A stretch of DNA of 63,880 nucleotides, the filler included, from Octopus bimaculoides (Eukaryota): the NCBI RefSeq assembly GCF_001194135.2. It is 8 parts of 6 records of this genome, joined end to end, with 100 filler letters (N's around TTAATTAATTAA, not from the genome) between each part and the next. Parts side by side here need not be neighbours in the genome. Positions count along the whole stretch, not along the records: positions 18,301 to 24,006 come from NC_069001.1; 7 more parts are not named here. One strand, given 5' to 3'. Below the pieces are notes generated by a model. It did not search any database. It was not told the DNA's origin and was given only the letters and a program-made list of their open reading frames with translations. Made by a program: the position numbers and the translations under genes. Positions 20,965 to 21,495 of the stretch are shown here, piece after piece (position 1 is the stretch's first letter; each line of letters opens with the position of its first letter).

Positions 20965-21495
20965 GTATATATAGATGCATATCCGGGTACAGGACGTCAA
21001 AAAAAAAACGTGGACAAAAAAGGAACGGGAACATAAACAAAGCACAAAAAACGGACTTTTCTTACGGACAACAGAATGAACACATAGGGAAACAGACAAG
21101 CCACATATAGAACTTTTCCTTCATCAGCTGCCTCTATTCTAAACTAGGCGTTTCGAAGATGAGGCAGGACGCGCTCTGAGAATAGCTCTTCCCGCGAAGC
21201 AGATTAACCTCTGCTCAAGTTCATCATATCACAGCGTTCAGTATCTCATCTCGTTCGGCTTAACGGCCCTTAACGTTGTTTTCACTGTTTAATTTTTCCT
21301 GTCTTGGTTTTCGTTTGCTACTTTGGAATCCTCGCGTAGCACGTTAATCCGCTTCGCGGGAAGAACTATTCTAAGAGCGCGTCCTGCCTCATCTTCGAAA
21401 CGCCTAGTTTAGAATAGAGGCAGCTGATGAAGGAAAAGTTCCATAAGTGGCTTGTCTGTTTTCCTATGTGTTCATTTTGTTGTCCGTAAAAAAAA
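20965..21495. repeat. Penelope pseudo-LTR pair: inverted copy followed by sense copy
   Basis: 21056-21208 is the reverse complement of 21343-21495; directly abuts the PLE RT; homologous to 26200-26650. Confidence 0.85.
21379..21434 (+). ncRNA. Putative non-circularly permuted hammerhead ribozyme (identical antisense copy at 21117-21172)
   Basis: gcGTC-ctgcctc-atcttc-GAAA-cgc-ctagtttagaata-gaggcag-CTGATGA-agga; 7-bp stem I, 4-bp stem III, 3-4-bp stem II; located in a PLE pLTR. Confidence 0.6.

What the first reader, a model, noticed from the sequence alone, without database searches (positions are those of the whole stretch)
21379..21434. Non-circularly permuted hammerhead ribozyme candidate in a Penelope pseudo-LTR
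Seen: gcG-TC | ctgcctc | atcttc-GAAA-cgc | 13 nt | gaggcag-CTGATGA-agga. ctgcctc (21384-90) pairs perfectly with gaggcag (21417-23), placing the GUC site directly against CUGAUGA as stem I. GCGU (21379-82) pairs with ACGC (21400-03) as stem III. A 3-4-bp stem II can form between 21392-96 and 21431-34, needing a one-nt insertion in the core. Established: PLE pLTRs often carry minimal hammerheads, and types I-III are circular permutations of three strands (A = III'-UH-I, B = I'-CUGANGA-II, C = II'-GAAA-III) in cyclic order A-B-C. Here the order is A-C-B, so the GAAA strand lies inside the loop of stem I. Inference: this needs a pseudoknotted fold or strand-swapped dimers, and would be missed by standard hammerhead searches. 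It is on the same strand as the PLE ORF, as expected for transcript processing. I recall reports of natural non-circular RNA permutations, so check the literature before claiming novelty.
Basis: partly seen in the sequence, partly recalled or inferred. Interest (0 to 1): 0.9.

Follow-up and report, generated by a model that had tools for sequence, protein, structure and literature searches.

The report
Hammerhead look-alike in an inverted repeat
Every conserved hammerhead-ribozyme box is present in the already-published "type SGC" scrambled order, but one essential helix is too weak, another is missing, and a strong ordinary hairpin competes, so this is most likely a look-alike and not a working ribozyme.

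Summary
GUC, GAAA and CUGAUGA, a perfect 7-bp stem I and a perfect 4-bp stem III lie at 21379-21434. An identical copy sits on the minus strand at 21117-21172.

A match this good is rare by chance: none in 200 Mb of random sequence with stem II required.

The A-C-B order is not new. It is the "type SGC" hammerhead validated by Eckert et al. 2023.

Three things argue against function:
- Stem II is only 3-4 weak pairs (+1.8 or -0.1 kcal/mol, against -4.8 to -7.1 in validated SGC ribozymes).
- The fourth helix that SGC-3 needs is absent.
- A significant 18-bp hairpin (z = -3.4) ties up GAAA, the cleavage site and part of the core.

The pseudo-LTR label is unproven. The motif lies in both arms of a 438-bp inverted repeat that ends exactly where a 5'-truncated Penelope-like element begins. 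The repeat matches neither that element's 3' end nor any Penelope protein profile. Three related elements carry an ordinary minimal type-I hammerhead after their ORF.

No other copies were found, so covariation could not be tested.

Verdict: probably non-functional, with about 0.12-0.15 probability that it is a genuine animal type-SGC hammerhead.

The parts
21379..21383 (+). Candidate block S, 5' part: GCGU (stem III 5' strand ending in U16.1) plus C21383 (H17, the putative cleavage site 3' of it)
   Evidence: Read directly; found by the descriptor.
21384..21390 (+). Stem I 5' strand, CUGCCUC
   Evidence: Seven perfect pairs with 21417-23. Duplex energy -11.3 kcal/mol.
21391..21396 (+). Linker AUC (21391-93) plus UUC (21394-96), the only possible stem II 3' strand
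   Evidence: Forms a 3-bp or 4-bp stem II with 21431-34, at +1.8 or -0.1 kcal/mol. In the minimum-energy fold, UUC pairs with GAA 21412-14 instead.
21397..21403 (+). Candidate block G: GAAA plus CGC. ACGC 21400-03 is the stem III 3' strand
   Evidence: Stem III duplex energy is -3.4 kcal/mol. In the minimum-energy fold, AAAC 21398-401 pairs with GUUU 21407-10.
21404..21416 (+). 13-nt linker CUAGUUUAGAAUA between stem III and stem I
   Evidence: It forms no helix with the 3' tail beyond chance: -3.2 kcal/mol against a mean of -4.4 for shuffled linkers.
21417..21434 (+). Candidate block C: GAGGCAG (stem I 3' strand), CUGAUGA (21424-30), A21431, GGA (21432-34)
21380..21429 (+). Extended imperfect hairpin of 18 bp (4+7+3+4) with a 5-nt loop. 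It contains stem I and ties up GUC, GAAA, UUC and GAUG of the core
   Evidence: The 54-nt segment folds at -18.5 kcal/mol, z = -3.43, 0 of 200 shuffles as stable. The 40-nt inner part gives z = -3.91.
21432..21442 (+). Local hairpin GGAA-AAG-UUCC directly after CUGAUGA-A. It is followed by AUAA (AUAU in the other arm), not GAAA
   Evidence: arm comparison.
21117..21172 (-). Second, base-for-base identical copy of the 56-nt motif in the left arm
21057..21208 (-). Left arm of the inverted repeat (152 nt)
   Evidence: 95% complementary to 21343-21494. The whole segment 21040-21510 folds at -283.6 kcal/mol, z = -27.6.
21209..21342 (.). 134-nt non-palindromic spacer between the arms
21343..21494 (+). 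Right arm of the inverted repeat. It ends in A8 exactly at the start of Penelope homology
21495..23116 (+). 5'-truncated, frameshifted Penelope-like element ORF: reverse transcriptase, CX4CxxC linker (22725-22751) and GIY-YIG endonuclease. It lacks about 180-210 N-terminal residues
   Evidence: The best homolog scores E = 6.5e-186. tblastn covers 21495-23114, matching residues from about 181-210 to the end of 724-753-residue homologs. Homologs P0001 and P0004 pass the Pfam cut-offs for RVT_1 and GIY-YIG.

Best explanation
The 56-nt segment is a hammerhead look-alike, not a working ribozyme.

What is physically there (shown): a stable, imperfect 50-nt hairpin at 21380-21429. It is embedded in each 152-nt arm of a 438-bp inverted repeat at 21057-21494. 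That repeat abuts the 5' break of a decayed, 5'-truncated Penelope-like element.

That order is the published type SGC.

Inferred:
- An RNA reading through one arm would fold into the hairpin plus the small GGAA/UUCC hairpin.
- An RNA reading through both arms would form a roughly 150-bp duplex.
- In neither case would the pseudoknotted catalytic fold form. It has no usable stem II and no clamp helix.
- The origin of the look-alike is either coincidence or a scrambled remnant of an old hammerhead.
- The inverted repeat is either a foldback or MITE-like element, or a head-to-head pair of truncated copies of an unidentified retroelement. The second option is the usual architecture of Penelope insertions.
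For: 1. Stem II, essential in every hammerhead, is only 3 bp (G-C, G.U, A-U) or 4 bp with a base bulged next to G12.
   - Its duplex energy is +1.8 or -0.1 kcal/mol.
   - The validated SGC-1 and SGC-3 have 5 Watson-Crick pairs at -7.1 and -4.8 kcal/mol.
2. The fourth helix is absent.
   - In SGC-3, disruption and rescue showed it is required.
   - Here the best pairing is -3.2 kcal/mol against -4.4 +/- 1.8 for shuffled linkers.
3. The energy pattern is the reverse of real SGC ribozymes.
   - Here stem I is strong (-11.3).
   - In SGC-1 and SGC-3 stem I is weak (-1.2 and -2.9), while stem II and the fourth helix are strong.
4. The competing nested fold is significant.
   - It folds at -18.5 kcal/mol, z = -3.4, 0 of 200 shuffles as stable.
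   - It pairs GAAA (AAAC/GUUU), UUC/GAA and CGUC/GAUG.
   - I estimate the catalytic fold to be at least about 5 kcal/mol worse, before any pseudoknot penalty.
5. Neither the arms nor the spacer shows similarity to the element's 3' region or to relatives' untranslated regions. None matches a profile of 118 Penelope proteins in any frame (E>1, against 2e-12 for the positive control).
6. Three relatives carry a conserved ordinary minimal type-I hammerhead 66-88 nt after the stop codon (CUGAAGA, stem II, GAAA, AACGUU, H, GGAG). So this lineage's own ribozyme has the classical order and sits elsewhere.
7. A second inverted repeat in the same piece (18760-19138) also carries CTGATGA...GAAAC in both arms without being a hammerhead.
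8. A looser descriptor gave a chance S-G-C match in unrelated metagenome DNA (L009/L016).
Against: - The boxes and two helices are perfect. Such a match is rare in random sequence: 0 in 200 Mb with stem II required and 1 without.
- Two hallmarks of real Penelope and SGC hammerheads are present: an extra base between A9 and 10.1 (A21431), and a G10.1-C11.1 pair (G21432-C21396). [quoted passage not shown]
- The longest mismatch-free stretch between the arms (68 nt) covers the motif. The probability is 0.067 for such a run anywhere and 0.023 for this 56-nt span.
- The setting fits known Penelope insertion architecture: an inverted copy plus a direct copy directly 5' of a Penelope ORF. It also fits the reported 'dual hammerheads on opposite strands'.
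- Natural hammerheads can have stable inactive alternative folds.
- Penelope hammerheads are known to be poor cleavers in vitro.
Confidence: 0.6

Rival explanations
1. It is a genuine type-SGC (non-circularly permuted) hammerhead carried near the 3' end of a Penelope-mobilised unit. It is active now, or was active in the master copy. It would cleave after C21383 through a doubly pseudoknotted fold, perhaps helped by protein or by co-transcriptional folding from a promoter in the spacer.
For: - All core nucleotides are canonical.
- Stem I (7 bp) and stem III (4 bp) are perfect.
- The chance expectation is very low.
- The motif is the best-preserved part of the arms.
- The setting resembles Penelope inverted and direct partial copies.
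- Craig et al. noted Penelope 3' untranslated regions with GAAA on either side of CUGANGA, labelled 'HHR_half_core'.
Against: - Stem II is about 0 kcal/mol.
- There is no fourth helix.
- A strongly competing hairpin buries three of the needed strands.
- There is no second family member and hence no covariation.
- Eckert et al. searched RefSeq, and the paper reports no type-SGC examples from animal genomes.
- A read-through transcript of both arms would be double-stranded.
Confidence: 0.14
2. It is a decayed or rearranged remnant of an ordinary Penelope minimal hammerhead. On this view the real ancestral parts are CUGAUGA, the bulged A and the GGAA/UUCC hairpin (stem II), with AUAA a mutated GAAA. 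The upstream GAAACGC/GCGUC is then a coincidence or a product of local rearrangement.
For: - CUGAUGA-A followed by a 4-bp hairpin is the standard layout of Penelope minimal hammerheads. Three relatives have it.
- GAAACGC and GCGUC would overlap into GAA-ACGCGU-C. That gives the palindromic helix III typical of these ribozymes (read from the sequence; for the hallmark).
- The motif lies 70 nt from the outer end of the arm. If the arm is the 3' end of a truncated retroelement copy, that is about where a Penelope hammerhead would be expected (inference).
Against: - After the hairpin both arms read AUAA or AUAU, not GAAA.
- There is no helix III.
- The sequence after the downstream GUC (21454-56) does not pair in register with GAGGCAG (worked out by hand from the sequence).
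- A relic with its GAAA box and helix III destroyed, but 24 other key positions untouched, is unlikely.
- A perfect GAAA plus 3 complementary bases arising in a 26-nt loop by chance has a probability of about 1e-3 (inference).
Confidence: 0.15
3. This rival concerns the setting and is not exclusive of the others. The inverted repeat would be a true Penelope structure: a head-to-head pair of 5'-truncated copies (152 nt inverted, 286 nt direct) of another Penelope family or of a non-autonomous element it mobilises. Both copies would end at the same 3' terminus (...GUCCGUAA[A/G]AAAA), with the truncated ORF copy inserted or joined right behind. That would make it a pseudo-LTR in the architectural sense.
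For: - Penelope insertions often have an inverted 5'-truncated copy next to a direct truncated copy upstream of the ORF (Craig et al. 2021).
- The enzyme nicks and extends both strands.
- The arm ends exactly at the ORF's break point.
- Microsatellites flank the whole unit, as expected from the known insertion bias.
Against: - The sequence does not recur at this element's 3' end.
- It has no similarity to relatives' untranslated regions and no coding remnant.
- A second, unrelated foldback repeat in the same piece shows that such repeats occur here without any Penelope element.
Confidence: 0.3

Closest known systems
Type-SGC hammerhead ribozymes (HRIMA-1 motif and variants; Eckert, Friedrich, Weinberg & Weinberg, Nucleic Acids Res 2023, PMC10085705)
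   Same: - Same 5'-to-3' block order: cleavage site, then GAAA, then CUGAnGA.
- Same crossing of helices I, II and III.
- A canonical core.
- A short linker joining stem I to stem II.
- An unpaired base after CUGAUGA, as in SGC-1 and SGC-3.
   Different: - Known members have a 5-bp Watson-Crick stem II, a 7-8-bp fourth helix clamping stems I and II, and only a weak 5-6-bp stem I.
- They show copious covariation.
- They come from metatranscriptomes and metagenomes, next to hairpin ribozymes.
- Here stem II is 3-4 weak pairs, the fourth helix is missing and stem I is a strong 7 bp inside a longer hairpin.
- The host is repetitive DNA next to an animal-type (Penelope-like) retroelement, and there is no family.
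Minimal type-I hammerheads of Penelope-like elements (Cervera & de la Pena 2014, PMC4209133; Lunse, Weinberg & Breaker 2017)
   Same: - It lies next to a Penelope-like element.
- It has an extra base between A9 and 10.1, and a G10.1-C11.1 pair.
- The helix III halves would join into the palindrome ACGCGU.
- Two motifs lie on opposite strands a few hundred nt apart, as reported for Schistosoma.
   Different: - Those are in the order CUGANGA, stem II hairpin, GAAA, cleavage site.
- They sit in repeats that recur at both ends of the element, and they form families with compensatory changes.
- Three relatives of this element have exactly that type 66-88 nt after the ORF.
- The motif here has a different order, no sequence similarity to them, and is not repeated at the 3' end.
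Foldback or MITE-like inverted-repeat elements, and the complex inverted/tandem insertions of Penelope-like elements (Craig et al. 2021, PMC8557442)
   Same: - A 438-bp unit with 152-nt arms at 95% identity and a 134-nt spacer.
- A second such unit lies 2.3 kb upstream.
- The unit sits directly 5' of a truncated Penelope ORF, and microsatellites flank the whole.
   Different: - No target-site duplication was seen by eye in the flanks.
- No other copy was found.
- There is no similarity to the adjacent element, so the family could not be assigned.

Membership tests
Hammerhead ribozyme (any topology) | Conserved core: C3-U4-G5-A6-N7-G8-A9, G12-A13-A14, the A15.1-U16.1 pair and an N-U-H cleavage triplet | tested here: met
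   CUGAUGA 21424-30, GAAA 21397-400, A21400-U21382 and GUC 21381-83.
Hammerhead ribozyme (any topology) | Helices I and III directly flanking the core | tested here: met
   Stem I is 7 Watson-Crick pairs (-11.3 kcal/mol). Stem III is 4 Watson-Crick pairs (-3.4 kcal/mol).
Hammerhead ribozyme (any topology) | A stable helix II directly between A9 and G12 | tested here: not met
   Only 3 bp with A21431 bulged, or 4 bp with C21396 bulged. Duplex energy is +1.8 or -0.1 kcal/mol.
Hammerhead ribozyme (any topology) | The catalytic fold is competitive with alternative folds | tested here: not met
   The nested hairpin fold is -18.5 to -20.7 kcal/mol (z = -3.4). It ties up GAAA, UUC, GUC and GAUG. Pseudoknot energies could only be estimated by adding up the helices.
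Hammerhead ribozyme (any topology) | Covariation or conservation across homologs | tested here: inconclusive
   Only two copies exist, both within one inverted repeat and identical across the motif. Scans of the genome, viral and metagenome collections and a six-frame protein search found no other copy.
Hammerhead ribozyme (any topology) | Site-specific self-cleavage | not testable with these tools
   Needs a transcription and Mg2+ cleavage assay.
Type-SGC hammerhead (Eckert et al. 2023) | Block order S-G-C with a short linker from stem I to stem II | tested here: met
   The order was read from the sequence. The linker is AUC (3 nt) in the 3-bp stem II register. The paper reports 'typically three nucleotides'.
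Type-SGC hammerhead (Eckert et al. 2023) | A fourth helix joining the linker between stems III and I to the tail 3' of stem II (required for SGC-3 activity) | tested here: not met
   The best duplex is -3.2 kcal/mol, no better than shuffled linkers (mean -4.4). SGC-1 has -8.4 and SGC-3 has -6.6.
Type-SGC hammerhead (Eckert et al. 2023) | Five-bp Watson-Crick stem II | tested here: not met
   SGC-1 has GGUCC/GGACC and SGC-3 has GACAC/GUGUC. Here it is GGA/UUC including a G.U pair.
Penelope pseudo-LTR hammerhead (Cervera & de la Pena 2014) | It lies in a repeat that flanks the ORF on both sides, so the same sequence recurs at the element's 3' end | tested here: not met
   There is no direct repeat of 21057-21494 anywhere in the piece. 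Local alignment of the spacer and right arm (21209-21494) to 23051-23650 and to relatives' ends scores at the shuffled level.
Penelope pseudo-LTR hammerhead (Cervera & de la Pena 2014) | Type-I order (CUGANGA, helix II hairpin, GAAA, short palindromic helix III, UH, helix I) | tested here: not met
   My type-I scan finds none in the arms. After the GGAA/UUCC hairpin comes AUAA or AUAU. Three relatives do have this type.
Penelope-like element (the adjacent ORF, Neptune-like by its linker) | [quoted passage not shown] | tested here: met
   The ORF matches proteins with this architecture at E = 6.5e-186 and 1.9e-162. Those proteins pass the Pfam RVT_1 and GIY-YIG cut-offs. CGDRRCGIC lies at 22725-51. 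The clade name rests on Craig et al.'s description of the linker, not on a phylogeny.

The most novel reading that the evidence does not exclude
The segment is a bona fide type-SGC hammerhead encoded in an animal genome and carried by a Penelope-associated repeat. That would be the first non-circularly permuted ribozyme in a eukaryotic genome. It would have a minimal 3-bp stem II and no clamp helix. It would presumably be switched between an inactive hairpin and an active pseudoknot, or be helped by the element's protein.
Probability: 0.12. Interest if true: 0.75.

Novelty: not a real feature. Interest (0 to 1): 0.3.

Why it matters
If it cleaved, non-circular RNA permutation would extend from uncultured virus-like RNAs to animal retroelements. 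It would also show that descriptor searches have missed a class of Penelope-associated ribozymes. That could explain the 'half-core' motifs seen in Penelope families that seem to lack hammerheads.

As it stands, the value is cautionary. A perfect set of hammerhead boxes with two perfect helices can sit on an ordinary hairpin. Permuted-ribozyme searches need all helices, a check against competing folds, and covariation before a claim is made.

Tried and rejected
- **Rfam, all 4227 families, E<=10, over the piece.** No hammerhead or other ribozyme. The only matches were microsatellite-driven miRNA look-alikes.
- **Search for other copies.** The exact 20-mer GAGGCAGCTGATGAAGGAAA was scanned against three collections:
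  - genome contigs: 3 hits;
  - viral contigs: 0 hits;
  - metagenome contigs: 9 hits.

  All hits had unrelated flanks, so they are chance matches.
- **Six-frame translation of spacer plus arm as a protein query**, to catch spurious ORFs over other copies. Nothing found.
- **Exact look-up of the 114-residue window ORF.** Not on record.
- **Closest Penelope relatives (L001-L004).** They share only about 66% nucleotide identity in the reverse transcriptase and have no match to the inverted repeat.
- **Idea that the arm encodes the missing Penelope N-terminus** (LMKEKFHKWLVCF resembling LTEKEADYLCNF by eye). Rejected: tblastn and profile searches find nothing upstream of 21495.
- **Idea that the element's own 3' untranslated region keeps a relic of the relatives' hammerhead near 23226-23262.** A multiple alignment suggested it. 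Pairwise scores are not significant (z = 0.6-2.2), so it is not claimed.
- **Canonical type-I reading using the downstream GUC at 21454-56.** Helix I is out of register and GAAA is missing, so it was rejected.
- **tRNA or SINE origin.** No tRNA-like gene was found.
- **Pfam on the stitched, decayed ORF and on the transposase-like ORFs.** No hits.
- **Similarity between the two inverted repeats of the piece.** None.

Full report
**1. The observation**

The sequence at 21379-21434 reads GCGUC-CUGCCUC-A-UCUUC-GAAA-CGC-(13 nt)-GAGGCAG-CUGAUGA-AGGA, exactly as described.
- CUGCCUC (21384-90) and GAGGCAG (21417-23) form seven Watson-Crick pairs.
- GCGU (21379-82) and ACGC (21400-03) form four.

The third helix is poor. 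It is either A21431-U21395, G.U, G-C and A-U with C21396 bulged beside G12. Or it is G21432-C21396, G.U and A-U with A21431 bulged after A9.

A descriptor written for this strand order finds only two hits in the 5.7-kb piece: this site and a mirror copy on the minus strand.

I scanned 200 Mb of Markov sequence with the local composition.
- The relaxed descriptor hit six times, about 1.4e-3 per 24-kb window.
- A match with stem I >=7 and stem III >=4 occurred once without any stem II requirement.
- It never occurred with stem II >=3.

So the pattern is real and is not what one window gives by chance. A few such matches per large genome are still expected. A reader open to any permutation across many windows could meet one.

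**2. The surroundings**

The motif lies inside an inverted repeat.
- The arms are 21057-21208 and 21343-21494, 152 nt each and 95% complementary. A 134-nt spacer separates them.
- The 56-nt motif is identical in both arms, so a second copy sits at 21117-21172 on the minus strand.
- The eight arm differences leave a 68-nt identical run over the motif. The probability is 0.067 for such a run anywhere and 0.023 for this span. That is a weak hint of constraint at best.
- A transcript through both arms would be a roughly 150-bp duplex (-283.6 kcal/mol).

Downstream lies a decayed Penelope-like element with reverse transcriptase, a CX4CxxC linker and a GIY-YIG endonuclease.
- Protein homology (best E = 6.5e-186) begins abruptly at 21495. 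That point matches residues 181-210 of 724-753-residue relatives. Homology runs to the stop at 23114-16.
- The N-terminal 180-210 residues are nowhere in the piece.
- The right arm ends, in a run of eight A, exactly at this break.

Is the inverted repeat a Penelope pseudo-LTR? By definition such a repeat recurs at the element's 3' end.
- It does not recur there.
- Neither the arms nor the spacer shows similarity to the untranslated regions of four related loci.
- Profiles built from 118 Penelope proteins find nothing in any frame of 20990-21500 (E>1). The positive control, the copy's own C-terminus, scored 2e-12.

The architecture is nevertheless typical of Penelope insertions. An inverted truncated copy plus a direct truncated copy lies directly 5' of an ORF, and the whole is bracketed by microsatellites (Craig et al. 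2021). The Poseidon enzyme nicks and extends both strands. Cervera & de la Pena reported pairs of minimal hammerheads 100-700 bp apart on opposite strands.

So the label is architecturally plausible but failed the one direct test available. A second, unrelated foldback repeat at 18760-19138 shows that such structures occur here without a Penelope element.

**3. What this Penelope lineage normally carries**

Three relatives share about 66% nucleotide identity in the reverse transcriptase. All three have a conserved ordinary minimal type-I hammerhead 66-88 nt after the stop codon. Its layout is CUCC-CUGAAGA-(4-5-bp stem II)-GAAA-AACGUU-H-GGAG, with the palindromic helix III typical of these dimeric ribozymes.

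The window copy has no recognisable hammerhead at that place. Its 3' region aligns to the relatives only at noise level (z = 0.6-2.2).

**4. The topology is already known**

Eckert, Friedrich, Weinberg and Weinberg (NAR 2023) divided the hammerhead into blocks S (site), G (GAAA) and C (CUGAnGA). Types I, II and III are the orders CGS, GSC and SCG.

They described and validated type SGC (583 sequences) and type CSG. They also tested a single type-GCS candidate, whose biological relevance they left open.

The full-text library holds no other paper describing it, and none reporting it in animals or Penelope elements.

**5. Does the candidate look like a working type-SGC ribozyme?**

I rebuilt SGC-1 and SGC-3 from the published oligonucleotides. 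Both have:
- stem I of 5-6 bp, which is weak (-1.2 and -2.9 kcal/mol);
- a 2-3-nt linker;
- a 5-bp Watson-Crick stem II (-7.1 and -4.8);
- a 5-bp stem III;
- a 7-8-bp fourth helix (-8.4 and -6.6).

Disruption and rescue experiments showed that all four helices are needed in SGC-3.

The candidate shares the block order, the canonical core, the unpaired base after A9, a G10.1-C11.1 pair and a 3-nt linker. Its energy pattern is the reverse:
- stem I is -11.3 and stem III is -3.4;
- stem II is +1.8 or -0.1;
- the fourth helix is no better than shuffled sequence, at -3.2 against -4.4.

Stem I is also only the best part of a longer hairpin, 21380-21429, with 18 pairs.
- That hairpin pairs CGUC with GAUG of the core, UUC with GAA, and AAAC of GAAAC with GUUU.
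- It is significantly stable: -18.5 kcal/mol, z = -3.4, 0 of 200 shuffles. The inner 40 nt give z = -3.9.
- GGA is also taken by a local GGAA/UUCC hairpin.

Reaching the catalytic fold means giving up roughly 10 kcal/mol of nested pairing. The gain is about 3-5 kcal/mol, before any pseudoknot cost. This is an inference.

**6. Weighing the explanations**

- **Pure chance** needs a rare coincidence.
- **A decayed ordinary hammerhead** explains CUGAUGA-A followed by a stem II hairpin. It does not explain the absent GAAA (AUAA or AUAU in the two arms), the absent helix III, or the out-of-register helix I after the downstream GUC. It would still need a perfect GAAACGC to arise in the loop.
- **A genuine SGC ribozyme** explains the perfect boxes. 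It is contradicted by the missing stem II and fourth helix and by the competing hairpin.

With no further copies, covariation cannot decide. My probabilities are:
- about 0.6 that it is a non-functional look-alike on a hairpin;
- about 0.15 that it is a scrambled hammerhead relic;
- about 0.12-0.15 that it is a real or recently real type-SGC ribozyme.

**7. Novelty and verdict**

The order is a known kind, so the topology claim adds nothing new. If activity were shown, this would be a new member of type SGC in a new host, an animal retroelement. That would be of real interest.

On present evidence it should be treated as a candidate that fails two of the four helix requirements. Interest is 0.3.

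Noticed in passing
window 18760-19138: A second foldback repeat: 146-nt arms at 91% identity with an 87-nt spacer. 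Its termini read AAGAAGAAAATGGAGATTGGGAAG...CTTCCCAATCTCCATTTTCTTCTT. It is unrelated in sequence to the 21057-21494 repeat. It also carries CTGATGA...GAAAC in both arms but is not a hammerhead. It looks like a MITE.
   Followed up: partly
L001:2191-2230; L003:~5199-5240; L004:11653-11692: A conserved canonical minimal type-I hammerhead (CUGAAGA, stem II, GAAA, AACGUU, H, GGAG) lies 66-88 nt after the stop codon in three related Penelope-like elements. Rfam did not report it at E<=1.
   Followed up: yes
window 22968-23109 and 23102-23211: The last ~140 nt of the Penelope ORF are repeated in tandem just past the stop codon. The second copy has a 37-nt deletion. The alignment scores 71 against 32 +/- 6 for shuffles. 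The junction shows AAAATTAAAC microhomology.
   Followed up: partly
window 20357-20880: ORF fragments that look like a Tc1/mariner-type transposase by eye (e.g. VFGMITSDGDVMPPFIF), upstream of the inverted repeat. Pfam gave no hit at E<=0.01, so this is unconfirmed.
   Followed up: partly
window 20880-20990, 23633-23845, 19300-19380, 18690-18760: Dense (TA)n, (TG)n and (CT)n microsatellites bracket the inverted repeat plus Penelope unit. This fits the microsatellite insertion bias reported for Penelope-like elements. These tracts also produce all the spurious miRNA-family matches in Rfam.
   Followed up: partly
L004:7041-7103 (minus strand): A SECIS element match above Rfam's gathering score (45.8 bits against 35, E = 2e-6). 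It overlaps the 3' end of a called 203-residue gene (7092-7703, minus strand) in a relative's locus. This may be a selenoprotein gene.
   Followed up: no
L009:~3540-3675 and L016:2411-2565: With a loosened S-G-C descriptor (G.U allowed everywhere, span up to 150 nt), an unrelated metagenome contig gives a match with stem I 6, stem III 5 and stem II 4. It is present in two near-identical loci. I take it as an example of the false-positive background.
   Followed up: no
window 21361-21365 with 21392-21396: GAAGA upstream of the motif is perfectly complementary to UCUUC just before GAAA. This is another alternative pairing for the would-be stem II strand. It is not preceded by a CUGANGA box.
   Followed up: partly
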